Below are positions 2,673 through 32,926 of a DNA stretch of 64,000 bases, piece by piece. The stretch spans positions 1 to 64,000 of the IMG/VR virus record IMGVR_UViG_3300025141_000016. One strand, written 5' to 3'. Each line of letters opens with the position of its first letter. The first letter of the stretch is position 1. The notes beneath the pieces were generated by a model. The model made no database searches. It worked only from the letters and a program-made list of their open reading frames with translations, and was not told the origin of the DNA. The translations under genes and the position numbers were made by a program.

Positions 2673-2996
2673 TTGAGTCGATACCGCTCCAGTAATGCCC
2701 CCACGGATACTGACCGTCAGATCCAGGCTCTCCTCGACCGCGCCTCCCGCTCGGTAGGGGAGGCGATCCGTCTGGCTTCTTCGGCTCCTGTGGCGGCTGG
2801 TCGTGGGAAACGTCGGGTGTCAGGGGACTTGGAGCGGGCGATGGCAGCCCTCCAGACGGTTCGATATATCGGAGCATCCCCCACAGGCCGCGATGAAATG
2901 AGCGAAGTCGAACTCAATCGCCTCCATCGGGAGCGCCTGTCGAATGAAAGGGCCGAGCGTCGTGCAGCGGTGAAGGAGCAGATCGATGTCGGATAA
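2673..2996 (+). CDS. Hypothetical protein (head cluster)
   Basis: 107-aa ORF with RBS GAGG, overlapping the portal start. Contains an IRLAS motif. Confidence 0.6.
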   Translation: MSRYRSSNAPTDTDRQIQALLDRASRSVGEAIRLASSAPVAAGRGKRRVSGDLERAMAALQTVRYIGASPTGRDEMSEVELNRLHRERLSNERAERRAAVKEQIDVG

Positions 2997-4707: not shown

Positions 4708-4710
4708 CCT

Positions 4711-4725
4711 CGGTAGGAGTCCTAT
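4711..4725 (+). promoter_or_regulatory. Late-type motif
   Basis: CGGTAG GAGTC CTAT. Confidence 0.6.
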
Positions 4726-4754
4726 TCCCGTGGTTGGGTGTGCCAAGACCAAAA

Positions 4755-4798
4755 AGGTCGAGGTCGAGGTCGAGGTCGAGGTCGAGGTCGAGGTCGAG
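4755..4798. repeat. Perfect hexanucleotide tandem repeat (AGGTCG)x7
   Basis: Read directly at 4755-4796 plus AG. Lies between a late-type promoter motif (4711) and the RBS AAGGAG (4803). Confidence 0.95.
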
Positions 4799-4817
4799 TA
4801 AGCAAGGAGATCCCACC

Positions 4818-5834
4818 ATGTCCAAAACCATTACCGCAACTGATCGCTCCCGCTTGATCCGGCTCGCATCCTCGATGCCTGCTGGATCTCCCAAGCGGAA
4901 GGCAATCCTCAATGCAATCGCAAGTACGGATCAAACGGATTTCCTCGACACGAGACTCGACCGGGCCTGGAAAAAGGCCCTGAAGTCGTATTTCGCATGG
5001 AAGCAGGATGGGGAAAAGACCGATTCCCGCCTCTACCAGCAGCTACGCCAAGACCCCACAAACGAGCGTGCCAACTCCACGATGCTGGAACTGCTTGCCC
5101 AATACCGAAAAGAGGGTGGGAAGCTGCTCAAAACTGTGAAAGCGATCTACGCTGCCGCAGAGGGCCACCCCATCAGCAAGCAGTCTGACTTCCGTCAGGG
5201 GAAGGGGAACTTGGACCATGCAGAGCATGGTCTCAAGTCCTTCACCCCCTCCAAGTACGACAACCCCGTGGACATGATGTACCACGGCTCGTATGGCTAC
5301 CAGATGTTGATGAGCGCAATCGAACACTTGGCCTACGCACGCCACAGTGAGGGCCTGAAGACTGCTTCTACGCGGACCCGAACTGCAAAGTACAACACGA
5401 AGCTGCGGGCGACGGACACGTTGTCAGAGGCCGCCATGTTGGGTGTGGCTGCCCCCATCCCCCGGAGGGGGTTGAAGACTGCTTCGACTGGTTGGGTCAC
5501 GGATTTGTTCACCGCGTGGCAGGACAAACGCATTGACAAGCACGACTTCTATACTGCTCTTTGGCCTTTCTGGAAAGACGGTCAGATCCGGCCTGCCGAG
5601 GTAGCTGCCCTTACCCTCGCTGCTGACTCCACCTTTGGTAAAGGAGTTCCTGCTGGCGTGGTCAAAATGCGGTTGGGGGACATTGAAAAGGGTTTTGATC
5701 TCGGTGAGGATGTGGATGCCATTATCCGACCCATAAGCCGCAACATCCTACGTCGTCTTGGGTTGAAGACTGCTTCTACGCGGACCCGAACTGCAAAGTA
5801 CAACACGAAGCTGCGGGCGACGGACAGGTTCTAA
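4818..5834 (+). CDS. Modular head-associated protein with GLKTAS linkers
   Basis: Start reassigned to ATG 4818 (RBS AAGGAG). N-terminal DRSRLIRLAS motif, three GLKTAS linkers and a duplicated KTASTRTRTAKYNTKLRATD. Confidence 0.75.
   Translation: MSKTITATDRSRLIRLASSMPAGSPKRKAILNAIASTDQTDFLDTRLDRAWKKALKSYFAWKQDGEKTDSRLYQQLRQDPTNERANSTMLELLAQYRKEGGKLLKTVKAIYAAAEGHPISKQSDFRQGKGNLDHAEHGLKSFTPSKYDNPVDMMYHGSYGYQMLMSAIEHLAYARHSEGLKTASTRTRTAKYNTKLRATDTLSEAAMLGVAAPIPRRGLKTASTGWVTDLFTAWQDKRIDKHDFYTALWPFWKDGQIRPAEVAALTLAADSTFGKGVPAGVVKMRLGDIEKGFDLGEDVDAIIRPISRNILRRLGLKTASTRTRTAKYNTKLRATDRF
5356..5826 (+). repeat. 63-bp exact direct repeat pair (5356-5418 and 5764-5826), plus a partial copy near 5469-5485
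   Basis: TGAAGACTGCTTCTACGCGGACCCGAACTGCAAAGTACAACACGAAGCTGCGGGCGACGGACA occurs twice, identical. Confidence 0.9.
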
Positions 5835-9067: not shown

Positions 9068-9748
9068 ATGAGTGCAGATCCAACCCGCGTTGCTTCGGCC
9101 TTCGCCAAGAAAGCGGCCATGAGCCGTGTCGCGGGGGAGGTCCGTTTCATCAAGGACCGGTCTGGCGATAAGTCAGAGTGGGGTTGGGGTCCGACTGGAC
9201 CCAGCGAGCGCCACATCCAAGAAGATTTTGTGTTCAATGCACGGGAACTCAAACCGCTGGCCAAGACCCTACGATCCGCTTTGATGGCCCTCGGCCATGC
9301 CACGTCAGCCCACAACCGGCTGGTGAAGGTCAAGTCGCGCAACGTGAGCCCGGATGGGAGTCTCGGCGGCAAGGGCTACATCCAGACGATCCCAGACATG
9401 CGGCGGCAGTTGATGAACTGCGTAGAGGCTTTGTCGGCCTTCACCGATACCATCTATGACGAGATGAACGCTCCCCACTGGAACCCCAGCGAGGACACTC
9501 TCAATGCTCGTGACCGCGATGAGGTCAAGGAGATCATTGAAGATGCGGAGGAGATCAAAGAAGATCCCGAAGGCTGGGCCGAGGAACAGGAAGAGGACAT
9601 GGATGATGAGGATGAGGACGAGGACGACCTCGACCCATCAGGAACCAAGATGGCCCGCAGGACGAAGGTAGCGGCTTCCCGTCGTGTTTCCGAAGGCACA
9701 GTATCTTCTCACCGGGTTCTCGCCCGGTACACTGGGAGGCTCCCATGA
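9068..9748 (+). CDS. Head-associated protein with N- and C-terminal RVA-type motifs
   Basis: RBS AGGAGA. N-terminal DPTRVASAFAKKAA, acidic tail, C-terminal HRVLARY. Confidence 0.75.
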   Translation: MSADPTRVASAFAKKAAMSRVAGEVRFIKDRSGDKSEWGWGPTGPSERHIQEDFVFNARELKPLAKTLRSALMALGHATSAHNRLVKVKSRNVSPDGSLGGKGYIQTIPDMRRQLMNCVEALSAFTDTIYDEMNAPHWNPSEDTLNARDRDEVKEIIEDAEEIKEDPEGWAEEQEEDMDDEDEDEDDLDPSGTKMARRTKVAASRRVSEGTVSSHRVLARYTGRLP

Positions 9749-11562: not shown

Positions 11563-14280
11563 ATGCGGGGATCCCCGTCCCAAGTAGCGCGTCGATGGAT
11601 GCAGGCTCGTGTCGAGCCTCTGAACCCCGAGCAGGCCAAGAAGTTCCGTAAGGAAGTGCTCATGCTTGCGAAGGCGGCGGAACGTGCGTCTTCTTACGCT
11701 GATGTGGAGCAGATTGTCCCTGCGGTGGCGAAGTGGAGACAGGCGTTTGACTATTACAACGCCGCTATCCGCAAAGAGTTGGAGGCTCGTGTCCGAGAGG
11801 GTGAGAATCGGAACATCCCTGTCCCCGAGGGTGCGACCCGACCGGATGCAGGGTGGGCAAAATACTACATCGAAAATGCCAAGCCGGTCTGGGATCTCTC
11901 TTACGAGGTAGGTTCGTTGCCGAGCGTCCCCAAAGTCACGAATCGACACGGTGGCGCTTTTGAGGAGCCCGAGGTGGCTCGTGCTCGGATGGTTGAGTTC
12001 TGGCTGGGCCGGGGGGATTCTCAACAGGAGGCAGAGCGGAAAGTAGAGGATTACCTGTTGGGGTCGCCCTCGTGGACCCGAGAGGAAGCCGAACAGAAAG
12101 CGGTGGATCGGTGGAAGGGGGAATCCCGTAAGTGGGCCAACCGTGTGCGTCGGAAGGCCAGGAAGACTTGGGCTTTCTACGCGGATCTGGCCGCATGGGC
12201 ACAACGGTCTATGGGAGGGGCGCGGGAGATAGCGATTGCGGTCCCCGACGAGGAAGTCGTCTCCCTGGAAGGGTTCCGTGTCATCTTCCGGGGCTTTGCG
12301 GAGTCCCCCTACCAAGACAAACTCCCCGCTGTGAAGCACGGGTTGAAGATGTACCGGCAGTTGGCCCAGAAGCGAGCCCCCATCCTGCTGAAACGGCAGA
12401 CACCGATCTTCATCGAGTGGACGTTTGAGCCGACCACCTCATCCAGTGCGGGAGCCTACTACCTGGGGAGTAAGATATTCGTGACCCCATGGAAGATCGG
12501 CAAGGACATTGGTGACTTCGTGAAGACGATGGCTCACGAGATGGGCCACCACATTTTCAGGACTTACCTGTCGGGGGCTGCAAAAAAGGCGTGGACTGCG
12601 TTCATTCGGGGTGACTACAAGGAACTCGACCTCCGCGAAGCACTTGCCATCATGCAACGGGTGGGGGCAAGAACCATCGTTGGTGATGAGTTGGCCGAGG
12701 AAGACCCCATCCTCTACCTCCAGATGAACACCCTGATGCACGACTCCAGATTCAAGTACATGGACCTTTTCAGTGTTGAGGACATTCAAGAATACCTCAA
12801 TGCAGGGAAAGACCCTATGGTCGCCGTTCCCATCAATCCCATCACAGGGTACGCGGGGAAAAACCCCGAGGAGGCGTTCTGTGAGGCTTTGGGCCTGTTA
12901 GTGGCCTATGGGAAAAAGGCGGTCCTGGGTCCGGTTCGGATGATGCTCCGGGGTGTTCTGCCGGAAGTCCGCATAGCGTCCGAGAAGACCATGACCGAGC
13001 GGGTAGCCCAGCGTAAGCACGCTGAAATGACGGGTGAGGCTTCCGTCGCCTTGATGAAATGGCTCTCCAAGGTCACCCAACGGATAGGGGTGGCGCGACA
13101 CGTCTACGTCGTCGGGGGAGCCGTCAGGAACTTTCTGATCGACAAGCCCATCAAGGACATTGACATGGTGGTGGACTCCCTCTCCTTACGAGGGAACCGG
13201 GACGCTGCTTGGGTGGCAAAGGAGATTGCCCGCGCCATCCCTACCAGCACGGACATTGTGACTGACGCTCTGATGGTGTCCAAGGTGTTCATCCAGGGGG
13301 AGTGGGACTTGGATGGCCACCAGATGAAGGATGAGGTCATCGAGATCGTCAACGCCCGAGCCGAGATTTACGAGCAGGACGAGGAGGGCAACTACCTGGG
13401 ACACAAGCCCGTCCGAGTTGACCCCACGACCTTGGAAATCGACGCAACTCGACGGGAGTTCACTTTCAACACCCTCATGTGGTCGTTGCTCTCGTTGGCC
13501 GATGGCCCGGAAAAGGCTGAAATCATTGACCTTACAGGGTGTGGAGTGCGGGATTTGGAGGCTCGCGAGATGCGTTGCCCCCAGGATCCCGACAAGACCT
13601 TCACGGAAGACCCCACACGGATCATCCGCACCATCAAGTTTGCGTTCAAGTACGGCTTCAAGCTGCCCCCGGACGTGAAGGCAGCGGCTACCCGGCAGGC
13701 TCGGGGACTGAAGCGAATCCCCTCAAAGGCGTGGGGAGCCCTTCGCGACATTGTGCTGGAGAACCCCCAGTACAAAAAGGCTCTGGGAGTCATGGATGAC
13801 CTCGGGGTCATTGACGTGCTCGCTGACATGGTGCGCGACGACCAGCAGTTCGCCACCACCCTGCTCAACTACTCCCAGAAGCGGGGAGTGGCGTTCATGT
13901 TTGACCTCATGGACCTTGGGATTCCTGTGGGTGCGCCCATGGGATTCATGGACTCTGCCCAACAACGCCAGTTCCGAGCGTTGTCTGTGGACATGGACCG
14001 AGATGAGGCCCTCCACTACCTTGAAGCCATCAAGAACCCAGGGGTGGCGTACAAAGATAAGAAGTTCGTGCCTTCCCTGGCCAGGGAGTACGGGGTGGAC
14101 CCGAAGAAGATGCGGGATTTCATGCCCGTGGTCACCCAGATTGGCAGGGATCTTCTTCTCGATGACCCCGAACTTCTGCACGATGCCCCTCGGCTGAAGC
14201 GAATGGTGAGGCGAGATTTGGGGTCCGCAAACGTGAGGGTGGCCTCGGAGTGGTTGCCGACTACTCGGGGAGGGTTTTGA
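11563..14280 (+). CDS. Multi-module protein: unknown domain + zincin (HExxH) + class II tRNA nucleotidyltransferase (CCA/PAP family)
   Basis: Zincin AHEMGHH...PEEAFCEAL. Nucleotidyltransferase motifs VYVVGGAVRN..DIDMVV, RAEIY..KP loop, DATRREFTFN and FTEDPTRIIRTIKF. Confidence 0.85.
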   Translation: MRGSPSQVARRWMQARVEPLNPEQAKKFRKEVLMLAKAAERASSYADVEQIVPAVAKWRQAFDYYNAAIRKELEARVREGENRNIPVPEGATRPDAGWAKYYIENAKPVWDLSYEVGSLPSVPKVTNRHGGAFEEPEVARARMVEFWLGRGDSQQEAERKVEDYLLGSPSWTREEAEQKAVDRWKGESRKWANRVRRKARKTWAFYADLAAWAQRSMGGAREIAIAVPDEEVVSLEGFRVIFRGFAESPYQDKLPAVKHGLKMYRQLAQKRAPILLKRQTPIFIEWTFEPTTSSSAGAYYLGSKIFVTPWKIGKDIGDFVKTMAHEMGHHIFRTYLSGAAKKAWTAFIRGDYKELDLREALAIMQRVGARTIVGDELAEEDPILYLQMNTLMHDSRFKYMDLFSVEDIQEYLNAGKDPMVAVPINPITGYAGKNPEEAFCEALGLLVAYGKKAVLGPVRMMLRGVLPEVRIASEKTMTERVAQRKHAEMTGEASVALMKWLSKVTQRIGVARHVYVVGGAVRNFLIDKPIKDIDMVVDSLSLRGNRDAAWVAKEIARAIPTSTDIVTDALMVSKVFIQGEWDLDGHQMKDEVIEIVNARAEIYEQDEEGNYLGHKPVRVDPTTLEIDATRREFTFNTLMWSLLSLADGPEKAEIIDLTGCGVRDLEAREMRCPQDPDKTFTEDPTRIIRTIKFAFKYGFKLPPDVKAAATRQARGLKRIPSKAWGALRDIVLENPQYKKALGVMDDLGVIDVLADMVRDDQQFATTLLNYSQKRGVAFMFDLMDLGIPVGAPMGFMDSAQQRQFRALSVDMDRDEALHYLEAIKNPGVAYKDKKFVPSLAREYGVDPKKMRDFMPVVTQIGRDLLLDDPELLHDAPRLKRMVRRDLGSANVRVASEWLPTTRGGF

Positions 14281-14780
14281 TGCTGACCCCATCCGCCGTG
14301 CGGGTAGCTGCGAGGGCAGCCTCCTATGAACGAGTGTTTTACAGCCCGACCCCGTTCACGCGATTCCGGGCCGTTTCCCAGAAAGCCCCCACCCTTATGG
14401 GGAAGCCCCAGGGGCTTTGGTACTCGTGTGGTAGTTCGTGGGAGGACTTCACTCGGAATGAGATGGGGGGTTCCCGATTGGGTGCCTACGCCTACCGGAT
14501 CGAGATCAACCCCTCTGTGATGCTCATCATCAAGGACAAGGCTTCCTTCCTGTGGTTTGAGGAGAAATACGGGGTTCCCGCCAAGTTCGGGGGGGAGGCT
14601 ATTGATTGGGGGAGGGTGGCTCAACACTACCCCGGCATCGAAATCTGTCCGTACCGGTCGAAGCAACGAATGGACCACGATTGGTACTATCCATGGGATG
14701 TGGCAAGTGGTTGCATCTGGTCTGGGGTCGCGATCAAGTCGGTGGAAGAAATGTCTTCCCTTGAACGTGGGTCGCGGTAG
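14280..14780 (+). CDS. Uncharacterised protein (KPxGLWYS...WDVASGCIW type, possibly ART-like fold)
   Basis: TGATG coupling to the previous gene. N-terminal SAVRVAARAAS leader, then a compact aromatic-rich domain. Fold assignment is tentative. Confidence 0.6.
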   Translation: MLTPSAVRVAARAASYERVFYSPTPFTRFRAVSQKAPTLMGKPQGLWYSCGSSWEDFTRNEMGGSRLGAYAYRIEINPSVMLIIKDKASFLWFEEKYGVPAKFGGEAIDWGRVAQHYPGIEICPYRSKQRMDHDWYYPWDVASGCIWSGVAIKSVEEMSSLERGSR

Positions 14781-14789
14781 CGAGACTAT
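14775..14789 (+). promoter_or_regulatory. Late-type motif
   Basis: CGGTAG CGAGA CTAT; the TAG is the upstream stop codon. Confidence 0.7.
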
Positions 14790-14815
14790 CAAACCCTCCG
14801 GGTGAGGAGTGTTTC

Positions 14816-17800
14816 ATGCGCCCGAAGGTGGCCAAATCCTACAACCGCATAGCGATGTACGACTTCGACGGAACCTTGTTCCGAAGTTGGGAGGCTACAC
14901 CTGAATGGTGGGCCGGGTCATCCCTCGATACTGGTCCCTACTCGTTTTTCGTGCGCCACGAGTCTCTGGGTGAGCCCTGTGTTCCTGATTCCCCGGAATC
15001 CGATTACTGGATCACCAAGACGGTGGCAGCAGCCAAGAAGGACTCCTCCGACCGAAATGTCTTTGTGGTCGTAGTGACTGGGAGGGTTCGGACACACAAA
15101 CGGCGAGTATTGGAACTTCTCAAAAGCAAAGGGATCAATCCCGAGGCTTCCTACTTCAATCCAGGCATGTCGGCTGCCAAGTTCAAGGTGGCGGTCCTCC
15201 GCAACTTGTTGGCGGGCCACCGAATGGTCAGTGCGGTGGATGTGTGGGAGAACGAGAATCAGACGTACTACGAGAACGCCCTACGCCAAGCGGCAAAGAA
15301 ACTGGACCGTGAGATCACGGTGACGATCCACAGCATCCATGTGCCGCCCAAGCCTCTCGTGTGTGGTCCCCGCGATTTTGGGTTGTCGAAAGATGCCTCC
15401 GTCGGTCGGGTGGTGGCCAAGTATCAGGGGAAGAAAGAAGTCCCCACGGCTGATGGGAAGGGTACGTCTACGGTCTACGAGTACGGCCCCCGTCAAGTGG
15501 CCAAACGCCACAAGGAAAAGGCCAAGCGGATCGAATCCCTCCGGCAGAAGATGGCGGAACTGCGGCAACAGGCTCGGGGTGACCTCACGAGCAAAGACCC
15601 TCAAACGCGCCTCACGGCGTTGGCAGTCTGTCTCATGGATGAGACTTACGAGCGCGTGGGCAACGAGAAGTCTGCCGAGGAAGGTCACCATGGGGTCACC
15701 AACTGGACGGCAGGTCATGTCTCTCTCGGGGACAAGAGTGCCACCGTCAAGTACACCGGGAAGTCTGGGGTCAAGCAAGAGAAGACGGTCACCAACGCTC
15801 GGGTGTTGAAGGCCCTGCGGGAAGCCATGAAAGGCAAGGGTAAGGGCGACAAGATCCTGTGCGATGGGGATGAGTGCGACATTCTCGCCAAGGATGTGAA
15901 CGCCTACCTCAAACCATTCGGGGTCACCGCGAAGGACATTCGGGGGCTCCATGCCAACGAGGAGATGCGTCGTCGTCTTCAAGAGGTACGAAAGGGTGGT
16001 CCCGATCTCCCGGTCGCCCGGAAAGAAAAGGACAAGATCCTGAAGGCCGAGTTCCAGCAAGCCTTGAACGATGCTGCCAAAGCTGTTGGCCACGAAGCCA
16101 GCACCCTACGGAGGCAGTACCTTGTACCGACCATGGAGGAGACATTTATCCACGACGGCACCGTGATTGACCAGTTGGCCAAGAAAGCTGGGGGCAGCCG
16201 CATCCTCTACTACATCGGTAAGAACAAGGCACAGCCCAAGCCCAAGCGGGTCAACCACTGGAAGGACCGGGGGCAGCCCGAACCGGCTTGGGTGCGTCCG
16301 TGGCTCGATGCTCCGGTTCAAAATGCCGTGTTTCTCACCACCAATCCCTTCGGTGTGGCAACGAACCACGGGGTGGTGGGGCATGTCTATGCCTATGACG
16401 TTCCCCAGTGGGTGCTCAAAGAGGCCAAAGGGCTCCACCGCTATGATTGGGCTACCGAGGTCATCATCCCCGATGTGCTGTGGAAGCACGTCAAGTTTCG
16501 GGGCAAGTCGATGGACCGGCAGGAGTTCGACCAGATGATCAGGGAGGGCCAGAACGAGCGGTCCTTTGCCCAGTGGAATCGGAACATGGGATTGCGAGAG
16601 AAGCGCAAGCCAGAGTTGGTAGGACAGCCTGTTTGGGTCACCGCCACCAAGTCGGATGCGGAGAAAGAGGAGGAAGAAGACCAGAGGTTGATCCGGCAGA
16701 GCCCCAAGAAGAAGCCCCCTCGTCGGGATCTGGAACGGGGTCGTGTTGAGGACACACACGAGACGGATGCCGATGAGGACCAAGACCGGAAGGACCGCTC
16801 CCGCAACTTCAAGGACGCGGCTGCTTGGGTCGCCCTCCGGTATGCCGCTGGGGCTGCCGCAGCCGAGGCCGATGACGAAGGTAGTTCAGGCGGTGGGGTC
16901 AGCGGTAAGTTCCTCATGTTCTTGGAGGAAAAGGGTGGCGATCAGGTCACCAACCCGGACACCGGGAACAAGGTCAAACTCAAAAGTCTCAAAGGCCCGA
17001 AGGGGAAGGAGTTACAGAAGCGGGAGTTCCAGAAGTGGCTGGACTCCGAGAGCGACGGAGATGCCGGTGCCGAGCCCTCGGGACCGAAGCCGAAACCGAA
17101 GCCGAAACCGAAGCCGACAGGCCCCTCTGCCGATGCGAAACATGCAGAGTCCCTGGATAAAGTAGTGGGTGCCCAACAGAAGCGTGAAGATTTGGTCGCG
17201 GAGGGAGAGCCCTTTGATGTGGAGGCCATCAAGGCAACCATACGTGAGGAGTTCTCCGCGATCCCTGGGGTAGATCCCACCACGATCAAAAACACCCTGG
17301 GGTCTATGACGTTGGTCCCCCCCAAGGGATCCCACGACACTCCCGAGATGCTACTGGAGGCAGCGGTGGCGAGCCTCACCAAAGCCAACGGTGGGGCGGT
17401 CAAGGCTTTCGGCAAGAAGACCAAGATTGTCGAGAAGAAAGCATTGGAACAGGTCACGGAACTTGCGGGGGAAGCCGCCAAGGGGTTGAGCAAGTCCCTG
17501 ATGCCACATGACTTGCTCGCCGTCGCGGCTCACATGGAAGCGGCTAAAGACGAAGCGGTGGCAGAGATTCTGGATGGACGTGCCCGTAAGGATGCTCGGT
17601 CCAAGGCGCAGTTCGCGGATCGGGTGCTGGAAAGGATCGATGGTGACAACCCGCCCTCTCCCGAGGAGATCGCGGAAGCCCTGGTGGCGAAGCGGGCAGT
17701 CGGGGTGCTTGATGATCCCACGATGCTTTACCCCCACAAGCCCCTGACGAGTTTGAGCACCGAACCGTTGTCGTTCGATAACCCTGGGGCCGAGGCGGCC

Positions 17801-18583
17801 TACCGGGAGAAAATGACCGAGGTGGCTGTTGATGCCATGGACGCTTACCGAACCTTCACCCCGGAGGACCGTGAGACGCATCGCAAGGGGCTGGAAAAGC
17901 ACATCAAGAAAATGACGGAGGGAGGGGACACCGAGTCGGAACAGTACGCCCAAGCCATCTCCCAGATGCGGGGCATGGCGCTTGCGTCAGCCTTGGAAGA
18001 CGGGGACAAGGCCAAGGGGGTCAATCCCACGTTCCAAGCGTTGCTGGTAGGGGCTGACAATGCGGGACGAGTGGAGGAGTTTGCCAGGGTCAACCTTTCC
18101 GGTGCTGCGGAAGGGGATAGTAGTGCCCAGCAAGTATTCCGTGACGTGATGGAAGATACCTCCCATGAAGACATGGCGAAGATGCTTCCAGACGATCATC
18201 CGGCCCAATCTGCCTTGAAGTTGTTGACCGGCTGCCCGTCTGGCGCAGACCCCAACAGTCAGGGGTGCCGGGAACTGGCGAACCTCCCCCAAGATTCCAT
18301 CGACATGCTGAACACGATGGTCAACGATGCGGTGATGGGAGAGGTGCTGTTCACGGATCAAGCCCTGGTATCGGCAGACCCTAACGCCTCGGTCGGGTCC
18401 ATCAAGCAGAAGAAGAAGCAGACCAAGCAGACGGGCAAGGGGAAGTCTTTTGCGGACATGATGGCGGCTTTTCTTGCAAGCCTCAAAGCAGGTAAGAGTG
18501 CCGCGCAGTTGCCCACGGGGATATACGACTTTGATCCTTGGAGGGCATCTATTTCCGGGCAAAGGGATGAGTTCAGCCGGTAG
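14816..18583 (+). CDS. Multi-module protein: HAD phosphatase (RNA-repair SAK type) + DNA topoisomerase IB + ART-like module + acidic helical region
   Basis: HAD: MYDFDGTLFRS...VVVTGR. TopoIB: YERVGN, GKSG, DVNAYL..TAKDIR, VGH, RRQYL. ART-like: YYIG...AVFLT...EVIIP. Confidence 0.85.
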   Translation: MRPKVAKSYNRIAMYDFDGTLFRSWEATPEWWAGSSLDTGPYSFFVRHESLGEPCVPDSPESDYWITKTVAAAKKDSSDRNVFVVVVTGRVRTHKRRVLELLKSKGINPEASYFNPGMSAAKFKVAVLRNLLAGHRMVSAVDVWENENQTYYENALRQAAKKLDREITVTIHSIHVPPKPLVCGPRDFGLSKDASVGRVVAKYQGKKEVPTADGKGTSTVYEYGPRQVAKRHKEKAKRIESLRQKMAELRQQARGDLTSKDPQTRLTALAVCLMDETYERVGNEKSAEEGHHGVTNWTAGHVSLGDKSATVKYTGKSGVKQEKTVTNARVLKALREAMKGKGKGDKILCDGDECDILAKDVNAYLKPFGVTAKDIRGLHANEEMRRRLQEVRKGGPDLPVARKEKDKILKAEFQQALNDAAKAVGHEASTLRRQYLVPTMEETFIHDGTVIDQLAKKAGGSRILYYIGKNKAQPKPKRVNHWKDRGQPEPAWVRPWLDAPVQNAVFLTTNPFGVATNHGVVGHVYAYDVPQWVLKEAKGLHRYDWATEVIIPDVLWKHVKFRGKSMDRQEFDQMIREGQNERSFAQWNRNMGLREKRKPELVGQPVWVTATKSDAEKEEEEDQRLIRQSPKKKPPRRDLERGRVEDTHETDADEDQDRKDRSRNFKDAAAWVALRYAAGAAAAEADDEGSSGGGVSGKFLMFLEEKGGDQVTNPDTGNKVKLKSLKGPKGKELQKREFQKWLDSESDGDAGAEPSGPKPKPKPKPKPTGPSADAKHAESLDKVVGAQQKREDLVAEGEPFDVEAIKATIREEFSAIPGVDPTTIKNTLGSMTLVPPKGSHDTPEMLLEAAVASLTKANGGAVKAFGKKTKIVEKKALEQVTELAGEAAKGLSKSLMPHDLLAVAAHMEAAKDEAVAEILDGRARKDARSKAQFADRVLERIDGDNPPSPEEIAEALVAKRAVGVLDDPTMLYPHKPLTSLSTEPLSFDNPGAEAAYREKMTEVAVDAMDAYRTFTPEDRETHRKGLEKHIKKMTEGGDTESEQYAQAISQMRGMALASALEDGDKAKGVNPTFQALLVGADNAGRVEEFARVNLSGAAEGDSSAQQVFRDVMEDTSHEDMAKMLPDDHPAQSALKLLTGCPSGADPNSQGCRELANLPQDSIDMLNTMVNDAVMGEVLFTDQALVSADPNASVGSIKQKKKQTKQTGKGKSFADMMAAFLASLKAGKSAAQLPTGIYDFDPWRASISGQRDEFSR

Positions 18584-19075: not shown

Positions 19076-19609
19076 TTGCGCCGTAACGCCGTAAATAATG
19101 TCAACTGGCAGCAGCGAGCCCTCGCCTTTCAGGTTGGGGACGTTGTGGGGCCGTTTGGCCTATTCGATGCACAGTCGGGCCGCGTCACAGCGGTTTGGCC
19201 TGCCATCGGTATGGTTGATGTGGAGATGGCCTCGGGCAACAAGCGGTATCCAGTCGAAGACCTCCAGCGATTTGACAGTGAGGGTGATTCAGAACCCCCC
19301 TACACTGACTCTGCCCCAGGTGGGCAGCCCACAGTACAGGTGCCCGGTGGCCCCGTTGACAAGTCGGCGGCTCGGGTGGCATATGCCTATCGCAAGGCAA
19401 TCTACTGGGCTGACAAGGACCGACAGTACAGGGCCAACCGAGATGAAATGGCCTCGGGCCAGCCTGGATGCCCTCGTTGTGAAGAACAGCCCCATCTCCG
19501 ACGGGCAGTCTACAAGCGACGTGATGGCAGCAGTGAACGTCTCCTGGGATGCCCAGGTTGCATGTTCCTCATCAAGAGATCCGACATTATGAACCTTGGC
19601 GGCGAGTAA
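19076..19609 (+). CDS. SH3-like + zinc-ribbon head-cluster protein
   Basis: FQVGDVV..GRVTAVWP..VDVE; linker SAARVAYAYRKA; CPRC...CPGC. Confidence 0.65.
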   Translation: MRRNAVNNVNWQQRALAFQVGDVVGPFGLFDAQSGRVTAVWPAIGMVDVEMASGNKRYPVEDLQRFDSEGDSEPPYTDSAPGGQPTVQVPGGPVDKSAARVAYAYRKAIYWADKDRQYRANRDEMASGQPGCPRCEEQPHLRRAVYKRRDGSSERLLGCPGCMFLIKRSDIMNLGGE

Positions 19610-21045
19610 TGGCGTTCTTGAAGCAGGCGAAGGCAGTTGTCGTCCATCCTCGCATTAGCGGGCGTGTGTGGGGAGGTATCCGTAAGGCTGCTTCTGGTCC
19701 CACGCGGGATCTGACAGCCCAGGCTCGGGAGATTCTGGGTGAGGGCCTTCATTCGGACGACTATCTGGTCACCCACTGCACCATCGTTGCCTCGGTGGAT
19801 GTGGATGCGGTGCCTGGAGTTCGCCTGGGCAACGTCAAGATCGGTAGCGCCACGGTCAACAGGAAGTGGGACGACTACTACATCAAGCCCCAATGCTCCC
19901 AGTTCGTAAACAACAACGGTGACGCTTGGTCCCGGTCGGTGTTGCGGATGGCGTACCCCACGTTTATCGGGGGGCACAACTTCCAAGAGCACGTCCAGAT
20001 TGAGGAACAGAGCAAGGGTCGGATCATCGACGCTGTTGCTCGTGACATAGGGGATTCCCTCTATGTGGACATTCTGGTCGCCACCAGCCGCAAGCACGCC
20101 GCTCTGGTCCAAGACATTCAGTCTGGAAAGATGGCTACCCTGTCGATGGGTTGCACCACTGACTTCACCGTCTGTACCAAGTGCGGCCACTATGCCGTCG
20201 ATGAGACGCAGTTGTGTGAGCACGTTCGCTACGCCAAACTCAATACCTTCATGGATGAGGCTGGGCAGAAGCGGGTCATCGCGGAGTTGTGTGGACACCA
20301 GACCTACGACGAGAACCCTGATGCGCCCGGTGGGGTCAGATTCATTGAAGCCTCATGGGTTGCGGTGCCAGCGTTTGCTGGGGCAGTGATGCGGAACATC
20401 CTCGCTCCTGGCGAGGTGGTTGAAGCCGAAGTCCGTAAGGTCATGGCTTCACCTCCTACCGAGTGGTCTTCACAAGCTGTGGTCAAAGCCGCCAACCTTC
20501 GTGGTGTCCAAGCCTTTGAGTTTGGGGACGAGGAGGGTGAAGGAGAGGGTGAAGGAGGGGGAGAGCCCGCTGCCGATGACGCTGCTCCTTTCCAAGCGGC
20601 TGAAGACACCCTCTACAATGCTTTGAAAAGTCGGGTGGTTGAGCGTCTACAGCGAGAGATCGCACAAGAGAACGTGGAAGACGAGATGGGGTCCGAGGCC
20701 CCAATGGACCCCAACGACAACATCATCAAGGAAGGAGCAGCGCAGAACTATGCCGCATCCCTCCAGATGATGACCCGTGTCGCATCCAGCCCTATTGCCC
20801 TCATTGATGGGGTCGCCACGATCAACTCTTCCTACGGGATTCGGGTAGGTCGTGACGTATATCGAACCGCTTTGCGGGTAGGGGCTCATAGCCAATACCC
20901 TTCCCTTACCCATTTCCGACGAGCGTGCCGCAAGGTTGCTGGTCGCGATTTGTCCTCTGCCGAGATCCGGGTTGTTGTCCGGCTTGGCTCGCTGCTCTCA
21001 CGGTGGGAGCAACACAACAACCCTCCAACCACCCAATCTGAATAG
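19609..21045 (+). CDS. Prohead (maturation) protease, assemblin/HK97 fold with Zn-ribbon insert
   Basis: TAATG coupling. HNFQEH, SMGC..CTKCG..CEH and FIEASWVAVPAF. Lies directly upstream of the scaffold and MCP genes. Confidence 0.75.
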   Translation: MAFLKQAKAVVVHPRISGRVWGGIRKAASGPTRDLTAQAREILGEGLHSDDYLVTHCTIVASVDVDAVPGVRLGNVKIGSATVNRKWDDYYIKPQCSQFVNNNGDAWSRSVLRMAYPTFIGGHNFQEHVQIEEQSKGRIIDAVARDIGDSLYVDILVATSRKHAALVQDIQSGKMATLSMGCTTDFTVCTKCGHYAVDETQLCEHVRYAKLNTFMDEAGQKRVIAELCGHQTYDENPDAPGGVRFIEASWVAVPAFAGAVMRNILAPGEVVEAEVRKVMASPPTEWSSQAVVKAANLRGVQAFEFGDEEGEGEGEGGGEPAADDAAPFQAAEDTLYNALKSRVVERLQREIAQENVEDEMGSEAPMDPNDNIIKEGAAQNYAASLQMMTRVASSPIALIDGVATINSSYGIRVGRDVYRTALRVGAHSQYPSLTHFRRACRKVAGRDLSSAEIRVVVRLGSLLSRWEQHNNPPTTQSE

Positions 21046-23323: not shown

Positions 23324-23353
23324 TCAACCACCTTCCCACATTTGGAGACAATC

Positions 23354-24226
23354 ATGTCCGTATCGAACTCTGTGAAGGCCAAGCTGATCAGCGACTACAT
23401 TAGTACCGCCGCTGGTCGGGCCAAGTTGGCCGCCTCAATGACTCAACCCCTCCGGCTTCGCCGGGACTACCATAGTGTAGGTAGAAAGACCTTTTTGGTC
23501 GAGCAGTTGCCAGATGGCGCTCTGCCTATCTACGATAAAGACCCCGATGTTACGGCATTCGTGGTCGGTGAGGAAGGTGAGAACATCATCGCCGTCACCA
23601 AGCCCCGTCGTGTCATCTTCCCTCTCTTTGAGATCGCCTCCAACCCGGAGATCCCACTGACGCAGGTGAAGGAACGTCGCTTCGATCTCATCGAGCGGTC
23701 GCAGGACCTCGCTCGTGCCCAGATCCAGGCTGCTGAAGACGAGCGTGTCTTCGCCACCCTCGATGCTGTCGCTGCCAACGGCTTCGACTCGGTTGGTGCG
23801 GTCAACGCCGACACCGCCGTCGTCGCACCGATCAGTGGTGACGTGCTCGCGGATGCTTTCTCGCTCATCGAACGCCACGATCTGCGTGTTGCTCGCGTCT
23901 TTATGAACGCTCGCGACTACGCCGATCTGCGGAAGTTTGGCCGGGACATTCTCGACATCGAAACCCAGCGCGACCTGTTGAAGACTGGTCTGATGGCAAC
24001 CCTTTGGGGAGCCCAGATCATCGTCAGCCGCCTCGTGCCGGTCGGCACCGTGTACGTCTGCTGTGAGCCCGAGATGTTCGGTCGGATGCCTGTCCGTACC
24101 GAGTTGACGGTCCTCTCGGCTGACGATCCCAAGGCGCGGACCATCGGGTTCAGTTGCTTTGAGAACCTGGGCATCGGTTGTTTCAACCCGCGTGGCCTCG
24201 CTCGTCTGACTGTCACCCGTCCGTAG
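23354..24226 (+). CDS. Major capsid protein (HK97 fold)
   Basis: Start ATG 23354 (RBS GGAGA), about 290 aa. GRKTFLVEQLPDGALPIYDKD, FEIASNPEI, AQIQAAEDERVF and WGAQIIVS..VPVG. Followed by a strong terminator. Confidence 0.85.
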   Translation: MSVSNSVKAKLISDYISTAAGRAKLAASMTQPLRLRRDYHSVGRKTFLVEQLPDGALPIYDKDPDVTAFVVGEEGENIIAVTKPRRVIFPLFEIASNPEIPLTQVKERRFDLIERSQDLARAQIQAAEDERVFATLDAVAANGFDSVGAVNADTAVVAPISGDVLADAFSLIERHDLRVARVFMNARDYADLRKFGRDILDIETQRDLLKTGLMATLWGAQIIVSRLVPVGTVYVCCEPEMFGRMPVRTELTVLSADDPKARTIGFSCFENLGIGCFNPRGLARLTVTRP

Positions 24227-32925: not shown

Positions 32926-32926
32926 T

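What the first reader, a model, noticed from the sequence alone, without database searches (positions are those of the whole stretch)
11563..15390. CCA-adding-like nucleotidyltransferase next to an RNA-repair-type HAD phosphatase: possible virion-delivered tRNA 3' end repair
Seen: a class II nucleotidyltransferase module (about 12990-14240) retains GGAVR, DxD, EDxxR and the R-x-E-x-Y..P flexible loop. Its RRD motif is changed to RRE and no PAP-type LIGRRF signature is evident. Two genes later, a HAD module YDFDGTLFRS..VTGR (14816-15390) resembles HAD domains of Swiss-army-knife RNA repair proteins, although its motif IV reads WENE rather than ED/GD. Established: tRNA-targeting nucleases leave 2',3'-cyclic or 3' phosphates that must be removed before CCA can be added, and T4 Pnkp/Rnl1 counters the PrrC anticodon nuclease. 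Inference: a heal-and-re-add-CCA pair packaged in the head to counter tRNA-damaging defences at infection.
Basis: partly seen in the sequence, partly recalled or inferred. Interest (0 to 1): 0.75.

Follow-up and report, generated by a model that had tools for sequence, protein, structure and literature searches.

The report
RNA-repair modules inside phage head proteins
A marine giant phage carries a tRNA-tail-building enzyme and an RNA-end phosphatase as swappable modules of huge multi-enzyme proteins encoded among its head genes, which suggests, but does not prove, that it ships an RNA repair kit into the cell together with its DNA.

Summary
Window 13000-14244 encodes a complete class II (CCA-adding/poly(A)-type) nucleotidyltransferase module, and 14828-15397 encodes a HAD_SAK_1 phosphatase module.

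- The NTase is the C-terminal half of a 905-aa protein. Its N-terminal half is a zincin metallopeptidase.
- The HAD is the N-terminus of a 1255-aa protein that continues into a type IB topoisomerase with an intact catalytic pentad.
- The 166-aa gene between them looks ADP-ribosyltransferase-like.

All three lie between the portal and the prohead protease/major capsid genes of a 297-kb marine huge-phage contig. This matches the 'polyvalent protein' pattern.

The comparative evidence supports the NTase-phosphatase pairing:
- Relatives fuse this NTase to HAD, 2H phosphoesterase and RNA ligase in many orders.
- In 22 of 35 related head-module loci the NTase sits with a 2H or HAD domain, against 2 of 22 loci elsewhere.
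- Sister phages gain and lose the modules as cassettes.
- All modules are under purifying selection.

CCA specificity, the tRNA substrate and packaging into the virion remain untested. This is a new variant of two known themes, phage RNA repair and polyvalent injected proteins.

The parts
11563..14280 (+). Gene for a 905-aa two-module 'polyvalent' protein (P0001): zincin metallopeptidase plus class II nucleotidyltransferase.
   Evidence: ORF and translation. Two independently shuffled modules by BLAST against 120 relatives.
11605..12984 (+). Zincin-like metallopeptidase (MPTase) module, aa 15-475, with HEMGHH at 325-330 and a downstream Glu at 437.
   Evidence: H325, E326, H329, H330 and E437 are invariant in 35 relatives. 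AF2 model has pLDDT 85.9. Foldseek matches jumbo-phage 'putative peptidase / M34' proteins at E 4e-7 to 1e-5. The best PDB matches are anthrax lethal factor chains, but at non-significant E-values (about 0.03) and TM about 0.17. In relatives the same module carries other cargo: TopIB, Ham1, PRTase, GGACT and ParB.
13000..14244 (+). Class II nucleotidyltransferase module (tRNA-NTase/poly(A) polymerase family), aa 480-897, with a full-length flexible loop.
   Evidence: PF01743 and phrog_2244. A profile search of the PDB gives T. maritima CCA-adding enzyme as best hit at 1e-26, followed by CCA-, A-adding and PAP structures. Motif conservation. dN/dS 0.09-0.11.
14280..14780 (+). Small gene (166 aa from the ATG that overlaps the upstream stop codon). 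Probable divergent ADP-ribosyltransferase-fold protein. Dispensable.
   Evidence: phrog_8582. 3244 representative clusters, mostly viral. AF2 model has pLDDT 89. Structural matches are almost all ART-fold proteins but weak: MbcT Z 5.5, NatT 5.3, ParT 5.1, a domain of the cyanophage A4 pre-ejectosome 4.8, AcrIF11 4.2. A natural variant lacks exactly 14263-14774. dN/dS 0.18.
14816..18583 (+). Gene for a 1255-aa multi-module protein (P0002): HAD, TopIB, X module, conserved linker and C-terminal domain.
   Evidence: ORF and translation. Module borders from BLAST against relatives.
14828..15397 (+). HAD_SAK_1 phosphatase module, aa 5-194. Motif I DFDGT, motif II VTGR, motif III K124, motif IV WENE.
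   Evidence: PF10307 above its cut-off. Weak phrog_415 polynucleotide kinase/phosphatase hit. Alignment of 39 relatives. dN/dS 0.24, with an unusually low dS of 0.085 against L006.
15404..16189 (+). Type IB topoisomerase catalytic module, aa 197-458.
   Evidence: PF01028 E 3e-24. PDB TopIB hits. R280, K316, R376, H426 and Y435 are invariant in 33 relatives. Present in all seven compared loci.
16169..16630 (+). X module, aa 452-605, function unknown, possibly a second ART-like domain. Absent from sister L004.
   Evidence: Indel against L004. Alignment with invariant GGSR, VFLT and ATEV motifs. Atlas leads to Arr and DarT/PARP families at 0.87-0.88 only. No Pfam or PDB sequence match.
13034..15393 (+). 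Cassette (NTase module, small gene and HAD module) that is replaced by about 14 bp in sister phage L004. There one ORF joins the MPTase directly to TopIB.
   Evidence: blastn colinearity at 81-88% identity. Junction sequences. P0006 architecture.

Best explanation
The region is an accessory RNA 3'-end 'heal and rebuild' cassette. It is built into the giant multi-enzyme (polyvalent) proteins of the head-gene block of a marine huge phage.

Shown:
- A complete class II tRNA-nucleotidyltransferase-family module is fused behind a zincin metallopeptidase.
- After one small ART-like gene comes a HAD_SAK_1 phosphatase module fused in front of an intact type IB topoisomerase.
- All of this lies between the portal and the prohead protease/capsid genes.
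- The modules are conserved, are under purifying selection, and are exchanged as units between sister phages.
- Across the clade the NTase is habitually joined to an end-healing phosphoesterase (2H or HAD) and sometimes to an RNA ligase.

Inferred mechanism:
1. Nucleases that clip tRNA acceptor ends leave 3'-phosphate or 2',3'-cyclic phosphate.
2. The HAD removes the terminal phosphate. A 2H domain elsewhere in this genome, or fused in relatives, would open cyclic ends.
3. The NTase rebuilds the missing 3' nucleotides (CCA or part of it).

Further inferred, with less support: the giant proteins are packaged in the capsid with the DNA, are cut into active pieces by the zincin peptidase or the prohead protease, and enter the cell at infection. 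The repair activity would then be present before any phage gene is expressed.
For: Gene context:
- TerL, portal, prohead protease and MCP flank the locus on one strand. The genes are tightly packed or overlapping, and promoter- and terminator-like sites occur no more often than in shuffled sequence.
- Six related contigs place these modules in the same slot of the head block.

Module identity.

Fusions in relatives:
- HAD with NTase in P0032, P0018, P0107, P0098, P0104 and P0114.
- NTase, HAD and 2H in P0015 and P0076.
- RNA ligase, MPTase and NTase in P0004, which is 86% identical to the window protein.
- HAD, RNA ligase and TopIB in P0154.

Association tests:
- NTase-seeded loci from IMG/VR gave 57 non-redundant loci, 35 with head markers. 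Of those 35, 22 carry 2H or HAD within 10 kb (18 in the same ORF as the NTase) and 28 carry TopIB. Of the 22 loci without head markers, 2 carry 2H or HAD. Fisher p = 7e-5.
- TopIB-seeded loci: a phosphoesterase is present in 11 of 20 with an NTase and in 6 of 30 without. Odds ratio 4.9, p = 0.015.

Other support:
- The 2H partners keep both HxTx catalytic motifs.
- Cassette gain and loss between sisters at 80-88% nucleotide identity.
- dN/dS 0.09-0.24 for NTase and HAD.
- No tRNA genes in the 297 kb, by ARAGORN or by Rfam RF00005, so the NTase is not explained by tRNA genes lacking CCA in the part held.
- The zincin MPTase is the hub domain of phage and plasmid polyvalent proteins, and is predicted to process them for or after delivery (PMC5512222).
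- CCA-adding enzymes and HAD 'Swiss-army-knife' phosphatases are already read as jumbo-phage RNA repair parts (PMC7824862).
- tRNA-tail cleavage is now a documented bacterial immune output (PMC12851939).

From my own knowledge, not tested here: the E. coli CCA-adding enzyme carries an HD domain with 2',3'-cyclic phosphodiesterase and phosphatase activities (Yakunin 2004). That is the same logic achieved with other folds.
Against: - No biochemical or proteomic datum exists for any member.
- Specificity is open. PcnB, CCA-adding and A-adding NCBIfam models score alike at 38-74 bits, against cut-offs of 290-1440. Motif E is diverged, and the body/tail region has no detectable sequence match.
- HAD_SAK_1 has no solved or assayed member that I could find. 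Its motif IV is atypical (WENE).
- Sister L005 has the NTase with neither HAD nor 2H at the locus.
- Among NTase loci the HAD is the rare partner: 2 of 35, against 21 of 35 for 2H.
- Domains of polyvalent proteins need not share a pathway. Fusion may reflect only co-delivery.
- The genome is about 67% complete, so tRNA genes may lie in the missing part.
- Virion packaging rests on gene position and analogy only. Phage G and Tunturi_5 lack the MPTase module. The PaBG virion proteome lists neither a peptidase nor TopIB.
Confidence: 0.45

Rival explanations
1. Same RNA repair chemistry, but not delivered by the virion. The proteins are made late with the head genes and work in the cytoplasm of the infected cell, keeping tRNA 3' ends intact during the long cycle of a huge phage. 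Their position in the head block is historical.
For: Nothing in the sequence demonstrates packaging. The genome also has a stand-alone HAD_SAK_1-2H gene far from the head block, at 235373-236578. Other jumbo phages (G, Tunturi_5, Aeromonas and Lak phages) encode free-standing tRNA NTases away from head genes.
Against: The NTase, TopIB and phosphoesterase keep the same slot just behind the portal in 35 of 57 related loci. They are fused to the MPTase hub typical of delivered polyvalent proteins. Late expression would give repair only at the end of infection.
Confidence: 0.25
2. The HAD serves the topoisomerase it is fused to, not the NTase. It would remove 3'-phosphates, and the 2H domain would open 2',3'-cyclic phosphates, left on phage DNA when TopIB cleavage aborts, for example at embedded ribonucleotides. 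The zincin peptidase would clear trapped TopIB. The NTase would be an unrelated co-passenger.
For: HAD-TopIB is the commonest HAD architecture among the collected relatives: 18 proteins, plus HAD-2H-TopIB in 3 and 2H-HAD-TopIB in 2. An unrelated phosphatase family, PAP2, also sits in front of TopIB in many relatives. Six TopIB loci carry a phosphoesterase without an NTase. MPTase-TopIB fusions are common, 11 proteins. From my own knowledge: eukaryotic Top1 adducts are repaired by a metalloprotease, then Tdp1, then the HAD-type PNKP 3'-phosphatase, and Top1 makes 2',3'-cyclic ends at ribonucleotides.
Against: The architecture counts are biased because that search was seeded with HAD-TopIB. In NTase-seeded loci the 2H or HAD domain lies in the same ORF as the NTase in 18 of 22 cases. 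A phosphoesterase is about five times more likely (odds ratio 4.9) when an NTase is present. The one sister without an NTase (L004) also lacks the HAD. RNA ligase co-fusions point to RNA.
Confidence: 0.13
3. The NTase is an offensive or regulatory tailing enzyme rather than a repair enzyme. It could be a poly(A) polymerase that marks host RNAs for decay, or an enzyme that alters tRNA ends. It would be delivered or expressed to take over the host.
For: The best NCBIfam score is to PcnB, at 73.5 bits. E. coli PAP structures are among the PDB matches. Polyvalent proteins mostly carry offensive effectors (PMC5512222).
Against: CCA-adding models score nearly as well as PcnB (68.5 bits). The best PDB profile match is a CCA-adding enzyme. 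The constant company of end-healing 2H or HAD domains and RNA ligase fits repair, not tailing. The tandem NTase protein P0007 shows loop deletions like those that separate CC-adding from A-adding enzymes (the comparison rests on my own knowledge of Neuenfeldt 2008).
Confidence: 0.1
4. Ordinary housekeeping. The NTase matures phage-encoded tRNAs whose genes lack CCA, as proposed for many jumbo phages, and the HAD is unrelated.
For: tRNA NTases are common in tRNA-rich jumbo phages. The contig is only about 67% complete.
Against: No tRNA gene in 297 kb by two methods. No Rfam family in the window. This does not explain the phosphoesterase partners or the head-block position.
Confidence: 0.05

Closest known systems
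Polyvalent proteins of phages and conjugative elements (Iyer, Burroughs, Anand, de Souza, Aravind 2017; PMC5512222)
   Same: Giant polypeptides with several unrelated enzymatic domains. A zincin-like metallopeptidase related to anthrax lethal factor acts as the hub. They are encoded next to virion packaging genes. Domain shuffling is extreme. ART, 2H, PRTase and ParB domains are in the repertoire.
   Different: That survey lists no phosphatase. It mentions a topoisomerase only once, and its NTases are described as protein-modifying Pol-beta enzymes. It also states that the 2H domains of polyvalent proteins were never seen with RNA ligases, and so read them as RNases or signal degraders. Here 2H, HAD_SAK, a CCA-type NTase and an Rnl2-type RNA ligase co-occur, which favours true RNA repair. 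TopIB is the constant core.
Jumbo-phage RNA repair repertoire (Iyer et al. 2021; PMC7824862)
   Same: CCA-adding enzymes and HAD 'Swiss-army-knife' phosphatases are named there as phage tools that restore RNA ends after host attacks on tRNA.
   Different: There the SAK HAD is said to occur mostly as a stand-alone domain, and I found no mention of a head-gene position. Here both are modules of giant proteins in the head-gene block.
E. coli multifunctional CCA-adding enzyme (NTase plus HD domain). From my own knowledge; the NCBIfam model NF008137 'multifunctional CCA addition/repair protein' was hit weakly.
   Same: One protein combines CCA addition with removal of 2',3'-cyclic, 2'- and 3'-phosphates, which is the same repair logic.
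   Different: The healing domain is HD in E. coli. Here it is HAD or 2H, in separate or shuffled modules. The score of 46 bits is far below the model's cut-off of 451.
Phage T4 Pnkp/Rnl1 against the PrrC anticodon nuclease (from my own knowledge)
   Same: Phage-encoded healing (a HAD-type 3'-phosphatase) and restoration of damaged tRNA as counter-defence.
   Different: T4 repairs anticodon-loop breaks with a kinase-phosphatase and a ligase expressed after infection. Here no kinase module was identified in these proteins, the rebuilding enzyme is a terminal NTase, and the genes sit in the head block.
Virion enzymes delivered with the genome: poxvirus core TopIB, T4 Alt ADP-ribosyltransferase, N4 virion RNA polymerase (from my own knowledge and PMC5512222), and the cyanophage A4 pre-ejectosome (PDB 9k3a)
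   Same: Precedents for packaged TopIB, ART-like domains and very large ejected enzymes. An ART-like domain of a solved pre-ejectosome protein is among the best structural matches of the small gene's product.
   Different: None of these is an RNA repair enzyme. Homology to the window's proteins is absent, or is limited to TopIB catalytic-domain similarity.

Membership tests
Class II nucleotidyltransferases (tRNA NTase / poly(A) polymerase, Pfam PolyA_pol) | Head domain with motif A (GGxVR and DxD carboxylates) | tested here: met
   PF01743 at 52.7 bits against a cut-off of 23. GGAVRN, D532 and D534 are invariant in 49 relatives.
Class II nucleotidyltransferases (tRNA NTase / poly(A) polymerase, Pfam PolyA_pol) | Motifs B (RRD), C and D (EDxxR nucleotide-selecting template) | tested here: met
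   Motif B reads RRE (42 of 49 relatives; RRD in 7), a conservative change. Motif C residues D656, G659 and G661 are invariant. Motif D reads [DE]DPTRxxRxxKF, with D683 in 48 of 49 and R686 in 49 of 49.
CCA-adding enzyme proper (as opposed to PAP, CC-adding or A-adding) | Score above the curated equivalog cut-off of a CCA-adding model | tested here: not met
   TIGR02692 scores 68.5 against 438.8. NF009814 scores 68.5 against 290. NF008137 scores 46 against 451. PcnB TIGR01942 scores 73.5 against 305.65. A-adding NF041569 scores 38 against 1440. This is a divergent branch and its specificity is undecided.
CCA-adding enzyme proper (as opposed to PAP, CC-adding or A-adding) | Flexible loop between motifs A and B, needed for A addition and deleted in CC-adding enzymes (from my own knowledge) | tested here: met
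   A full-length loop of about 31 aa lies between R599 and R630. Modules 2 and 3 of the tandem relative P0007 lack 13 and 17 residues there.
CCA-adding enzyme proper (as opposed to PAP, CC-adding or A-adding) | tRNA-binding body and tail domains; addition that stops at CCA | not tested
   Only the head and neck (profile positions 27-286) align to solved enzymes. Activity needs a bench assay.
HAD superfamily, HAD_SAK_1 (PF10307) | Pfam score above the gathering cut-off | tested here: met
   31.1 bits against 25.6 and 34.5 bits in the genome search. Relatives reach 49 bits.
HAD superfamily, HAD_SAK_1 (PF10307) | Motif I DxDxT, motif II T/S, motif III K/R | tested here: met
   D16, D18, T20 and K124 are invariant. 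T88 is at least 90% conserved.
HAD superfamily, HAD_SAK_1 (PF10307) | Motif IV acidic pair (DD, ED or GDxxxD) | tested here: inconclusive
   It reads W-E145-N-E147. The subclade conserves WENE, others have WEDR, and one has WEDE. Two acidic residues remain but their spacing differs.
HAD superfamily, HAD_SAK_1 (PF10307) | Polynucleotide 3'-phosphatase activity | not testable with these tools
   No solved or assayed relative was found by sequence. There is only a weak phrog_415 polynucleotide kinase/phosphatase hit, E 0.0055.
Polyvalent proteins (Iyer 2017) | Two or more unrelated effector or enzyme domains in one polypeptide, with combinatorial architectures in relatives | tested here: met
Polyvalent proteins (Iyer 2017) | Zincin-like MPTase hub domain | tested here: met
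   HExxH plus Glu are invariant. The fold matches phage M34-like peptidases at E 4e-7 to 1e-5; the PDB matches to anthrax lethal factor are weak, E about 0.03.
Polyvalent proteins (Iyer 2017) | Encoded in the virion packaging or late-gene context | tested here: met
   The locus lies between the portal (2986-4707) and the prohead protease (19549-21045) and MCP (23342-24226). This is conserved in relatives.
Polyvalent proteins (Iyer 2017) | Physically packaged and delivered into the host | not testable with these tools
   No cultured relative or proteome is available.
Type IB topoisomerase | Catalytic pentad R-K-R-H-Y | tested here: met
   R280, K316, R376, H426 and Y435 are invariant in 33 relatives. 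PF01028 E 3e-24. I mapped them to human R488, K532, R590, H632 and Y723 from the alignment and my own recollection of the human numbering.
ADP-ribosyltransferase fold (small gene 14280-14780) | Significant sequence or structure match to an ART family | tested here: inconclusive
   No Pfam, PADLOC or NCBIfam hit. hhalign against the genome's own ART-PolyVal domain is not significant. Nearly all of the top structural matches are ART-fold proteins, but Z is at most 5.5 and Foldseek E at least 0.19. Atlas scores are 0.83-0.85.

The most novel reading that the evidence does not exclude
A large clade of marine huge phages packs a 'first-responder' enzyme kit into the capsid as giant polyproteins. 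The kit holds a type IB topoisomerase as constant core, plus exchangeable RNA-repair cargo: a CCA-type NTase, 2H or HAD end-healing enzymes and RNA ligase. The zincin peptidase cuts the polyproteins apart. tRNA acceptor ends clipped by host or rival-element nucleases would then be rebuilt from the first seconds of infection, before any phage gene is expressed. This would be the first virion-delivered RNA repair system.
Probability: 0.3. Interest if true: 0.8.

Novelty: new variant of a known kind. Interest (0 to 1): 0.6.

Why it matters
- Attacks on tRNA, now including cleavage of the 3' tail itself, are a major class of bacterial immunity. Known phage answers are spare tRNAs and repair enzymes made after infection.
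- If these modules are really carried in the capsid, phages would have a pre-emptive repair route. The head-block polyproteins of uncultured huge phages would then be a rich, modular source of RNA-end-processing enzymes.
- Even without delivery, the locus is useful. It gives a natural swap series in sister phages, with and without the NTase, HAD, ART-like gene and RNA ligase. It also gives a statistically supported NTase-phosphoesterase partnership that can be tested with four recombinant domains.
- It shows that a catalytically intact type IB topoisomerase is a conserved element of the head-gene block in this clade. No function for it is known.

Tried and rejected
- No near-identical phage record exists in the phage collection (megablast).
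- The MPTase profile finds nothing in phage G or Tunturi_5, so their data cannot be transferred.
- A full-length alignment of P0001 for folding misplaced the N-terminal fragments. I dropped it and folded the N-module alone.
- A HAD profile against PDB sequences gave nothing meaningful. The same was true for the X module and the small protein.
- The X module and the small protein are not detectably related to each other, nor to the genome's own ART-PolyVal domain.
- Pfam scans of the small-protein family, the X module and the C-terminal domain of P0002 gave nothing.
- PADLOC gave nothing. Rfam gave nothing in the window.
- No repeats beyond chance lie at the cassette borders. There is only a 10-12 nt similarity, encoding Ala-Ser-Val, at both ends.
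- The promoter and terminator scan was at chance level.
- DUF5661, RtcB and 2_5_RNA_ligase2 models do not hit this genome. The RNA_ligase model gives only a sub-threshold hit at 114.8 kb.
- The PaBG virion proteome is too shallow to inform.
- My first reading that the topoisomerase lacks its first catalytic arginine was a mis-registration of the human numbering. I withdrew it after the alignment.
The structures of the NTase and HAD modules were not predicted because both job slots had been used.
- No complex prediction was run, because no binding claim is made.

Full report
**What the window is.** The window is the first 64 kb of a single 297,104-bp IMG/VR virus contig, linear, with a CheckV completeness of about 67%. 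GC content is about 59%.
- It opens with a large terminase (122-2050) and a portal (2986-4707). It continues on the same strand to a prohead protease (19549-21045) and a major capsid protein (23342-24226).
- The capsid protein is 83% identical to that of an uncultured 485-kb phage (LR745208), 50% to Tunturiibacter phage Tunturi_5 and 41% to Bacillus phage G.
- Public runs that hold the sequence are marine metagenomes.
- The finding therefore lies in the head-gene block of a marine huge phage.

**Check of the observation.**
- ORF 11563-14280 (905 aa) matches Pfam PolyA_pol at aa 514-671 and phage tRNA-nucleotidyltransferase PHROGs.
- ORF 14816-18583 (1255 aa) matches HAD_SAK_1 at aa 30-179, above the curated cut-off.
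- All quoted motifs are present. In alignments of 49 and 39 relatives they sit in invariant or nearly invariant columns.
- RRE instead of RRD is the family norm (42 of 49).
- WENE instead of the WEDR of other members is conserved within a subclade that includes the window.

Both modules are pieces of larger proteins.
- BLAST against 120 relatives splits P0001 cleanly into an N-module (aa 10-475) and the NTase module (aa 480-897). The two occur independently elsewhere.
- The N-module has an invariant HExxH-H and a downstream Glu. It folds confidently (pLDDT 85.9).
- That fold matches 'putative peptidase / M34' proteins of the jumbo phages PaBG, Motura and pEa_SNUABM_5 at Foldseek E 4e-7 to 1e-5. 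In the PDB it matches anthrax lethal factor only weakly.
- This is the zincin-like metallopeptidase that Iyer et al. 2017 describe as the hub of phage and plasmid 'polyvalent proteins'. They unify it with lethal factor and predict that it processes those proteins for or after delivery (PMC5512222).
- P0002 has five parts: HAD (aa 1-190), a type IB topoisomerase (aa 195-458; PF01028 E 3e-24), a 150-aa X module, a short conserved acidic linker, and a C-terminal domain.
- The topoisomerase pentad R280, K316, R376, H426 and Y435 is invariant in 33 relatives.
- The gene between P0001 and P0002 starts at an ATG that overlaps the stop codon of P0001. It belongs to a very large, mostly viral family without annotation.
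- Its model (pLDDT 89) gives only weak structural matches, but almost all of them are ADP-ribosyltransferase-fold proteins: MbcT, NatT, ParT, AcrIF11, RES, diphtheria- and cholix-type toxins and PARPs. One is a domain of the cyanophage A4 pre-ejectosome.
- I treat 'ART-like' as probable, not established.

**Is the NTase-HAD pairing meaningful?** Three lines of evidence say yes, with limits.

*Fusions.*
- The same two modules occur in one polypeptide in P0032 (HAD 75% and NTase 62% identical to the window's) and in P0018, P0107, P0098, P0104 and P0114.
- NTase, HAD and 2H phosphoesterase are fused in P0015 and P0076.
- An Rnl2-type RNA ligase is fused to the MPTase-NTase protein in P0004, which is 86% identical to P0001.
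- HAD, RNA ligase and TopIB are fused in P0154.
- Together these are the textbook parts of RNA end healing, rebuilding and sealing.

*Association.*
- An IMG/VR scan seeded with the NTase gave 57 non-redundant loci. Of these, 35 have a terminase, portal, protease or capsid homologue within 10 kb.
- Of the 35, 22 carry a 2H or HAD domain (18 in the same ORF as the NTase) and 28 carry TopIB.
- Of the 22 loci without head markers, only 2 carry a phosphoesterase (Fisher p = 7e-5).
- In a scan seeded with TopIB, a phosphoesterase is present in 11 of 20 loci with the NTase and in 6 of 30 without it (odds ratio 4.9, p = 0.015).
- The 2H partners keep both HxTx motifs.
- Two unrelated end-healing folds thus alternate beside the NTase. 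This argues that what is selected is removal of a terminal or cyclic phosphate next to nucleotide addition.
- That is the same logic as the HD domain of the E. coli CCA-adding enzyme (from my own knowledge).

*Cassette behaviour.* Four sister genomes, colinear at 80-88% nucleotide identity, differ at exactly this spot.
- L004 lacks 13034-15393 (NTase module, small gene and HAD module). It joins the MPTase in frame to TopIB.
- L005 keeps the NTase but lacks the small gene and the HAD.
- L006 has everything plus an N-terminal RNA ligase.
- A contig in a further marine sample lacks only the small gene, skipping 512 bases from 14263 to 14774.
- dN/dS is 0.09-0.11 for the NTase, 0.24 for the HAD, 0.11-0.14 for TopIB and 0.18 for the small gene. 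All are therefore maintained genes.

*The limits.*
- L005 shows that the NTase can do without a local phosphoesterase.
- The HAD is the rare partner compared with 2H: 2 against 21 of 35 loci.
- Some phosphoesterases accompany TopIB without an NTase.
- The domains of polyvalent proteins may share only a delivery route, not a pathway.

**What the NTase does.**
- A profile search of solved structures puts the T. maritima CCA-adding enzyme first (1e-26). Other CCA-adding enzymes, A. aeolicus A- and CC-adding enzymes and E. coli PAP follow. Only the head and neck regions align.
- NCBIfam equivalog models for CCA-adding, A-adding and PcnB enzymes all score far below their cut-offs and close to each other. 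Membership of 'CCA-adding enzyme' in the strict sense is therefore not shown.
- Two observations lean toward tRNA-end work. The window's module has the full flexible loop. In the triple-NTase relative P0007 the second and third copies have 13- and 17-residue loop deletions and altered motif D. This recalls the split between CC-adding and A-adding enzymes (from my own knowledge).
- The contig has no tRNA gene by ARAGORN or by the Rfam tRNA model. This weakens the housekeeping explanation, but one third of the genome is missing.

**Is it delivered by the virion?** The evidence is contextual.
- The modules keep a conserved position directly behind the portal and before the protease and capsid genes.
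- They are fused to the MPTase hub.
- There are precedents for packaged enzymes: T4 Alt, N4 virion RNA polymerase and P1 Dar proteins (PMC5512222), and poxvirus core TopIB (from my own knowledge).
- An ART-like domain of a solved pre-ejectosome protein is among the best matches of the small gene's product.
- Short motifs of the types 'VR[IV]AS' and 'RVAxR[YWK]' are concentrated at module borders. They lie within 25 residues of a border in 74% and 57% of cases, against about 15% for random positions. They are 6- to 8-fold denser outside modules than inside. They could be processing sites or recombination joints.
- No proteome of a relative is available.
- I therefore put the chemistry (RNA 3'-end healing plus rebuilding) at about 0.6, and delivery given that chemistry at about one half.

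**Elsewhere in the genome.**
- A second, stronger HAD_SAK_1 (78 bits) lies at 235373-236578. It is fused to a compact 2H domain with two HVTL motifs, and could supply the cyclic phosphodiesterase step.
- Directly upstream of it is a 1247-aa protein with an ART-PolyVal domain.
- The ART-next-to-HAD arrangement thus occurs twice in this genome, if the small gene is indeed ART-like.

**Comparison with what is known, and novelty.**
- Phage RNA repair, and the use of CCA-adding enzymes and HAD 'Swiss-army-knife' phosphatases by jumbo phages, are described (PMC7824862).
- Polyvalent, probably injected, multi-enzyme proteins are described too (PMC5512222).
- The combination is new. RNA-repair modules, including RNA ligase, are built into head-block polyproteins around a conserved TopIB, are widespread in marine huge phages and are exchanged as cassettes.
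- The 2017 survey explicitly did not find 2H with RNA ligases in polyvalent proteins, and so read those 2H domains as non-repair enzymes. This clade is an exception.
- I rate it a new variant of a known kind. The interest is moderate to high because the hypothesis is directly testable and because tRNA-tail cleavage has just been shown to be an immune mechanism (PMC12851939).

Noticed in passing
window 15404-16189: A type IB topoisomerase module with an invariant R-K-R-H-Y pentad follows the HAD directly. It is the one constant element of this head-block locus in all seven compared phages and in 28 of 35 related head-module loci. Its role in a head-gene block is unknown.
   Followed up: yes
window 14263-14774: The small ART-like gene is missing, replaced by 11 bases, in a contig about 97% identical from another marine sample (run X3). 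The NTase gene then sits directly next to the HAD-TopIB gene.
   Followed up: yes
window 16169-16630: A 150-aa X module inside P0002 is absent from sister L004. It has invariant GGSR, VFLT and ATEV motifs that resemble an R-S-E ADP-ribosyltransferase triad. Support comes only from language-model leads to Arr and DarT/PARP families at 0.87-0.88, with no sequence or PDB match.
   Followed up: partly
P0001 aa 7, 469, 480, 891; P0003 aa 7 of the 166-aa form; P0002 aa 198; also window genes 9068-9748, 28689-30617, 32834-33997: Short motifs of the types 'VR[IV]AS' and 'RVAxR[YWK]' recur at the starts and ends of modules. They are enriched 6- to 8-fold between modules in 102 multi-module relatives. 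They may be protease sites or recombination joints.
   Followed up: partly
genome G000:C1:231505-236578 (outside the window): A second HAD_SAK_1 (78 bits) is fused to a compact 2H domain with two HVTL motifs. Directly upstream lies a 1247-aa protein with an ART-PolyVal domain. This may be a cytoplasmic or second polyvalent healing set.
   Followed up: partly
window 14816-15400 against L006:7239-7823: The HAD module differs from its L006 counterpart by dS 0.085 only, while flanking modules show dS 0.3-1.0. This looks like a recent transfer of the module between lineages.
   Followed up: partly
protein P0007 (relative, 1326 aa): It has three tandem NTase modules. The second and third have 13- and 17-residue deletions in the flexible loop and changed motif D (KDPTR, ESPIR). 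This suggests a division of labour like that of CC-adding and A-adding enzymes.
   Followed up: partly
window 4709-5826: Gene 4734-5834 (366 aa, with an Arg-Ser repeat at its N-terminus) is an insertion just after the portal gene. Sisters L004 and L005 lack it.
   Followed up: no
whole contig G000:C1: No tRNA gene was found in 297 kb by ARAGORN or by Rfam RF00005. This is unusual for a huge phage that encodes a tRNA nucleotidyltransferase, although the contig is estimated to be 67% complete.
   Followed up: yes
relatives P0127-P0149 and others: Many TopIB giant proteins of this clade carry a PAP2-family phosphatase (PF01569) in place of the HAD. A phosphatase in front of TopIB is thus a recurrent theme with two unrelated folds.
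   Followed up: no
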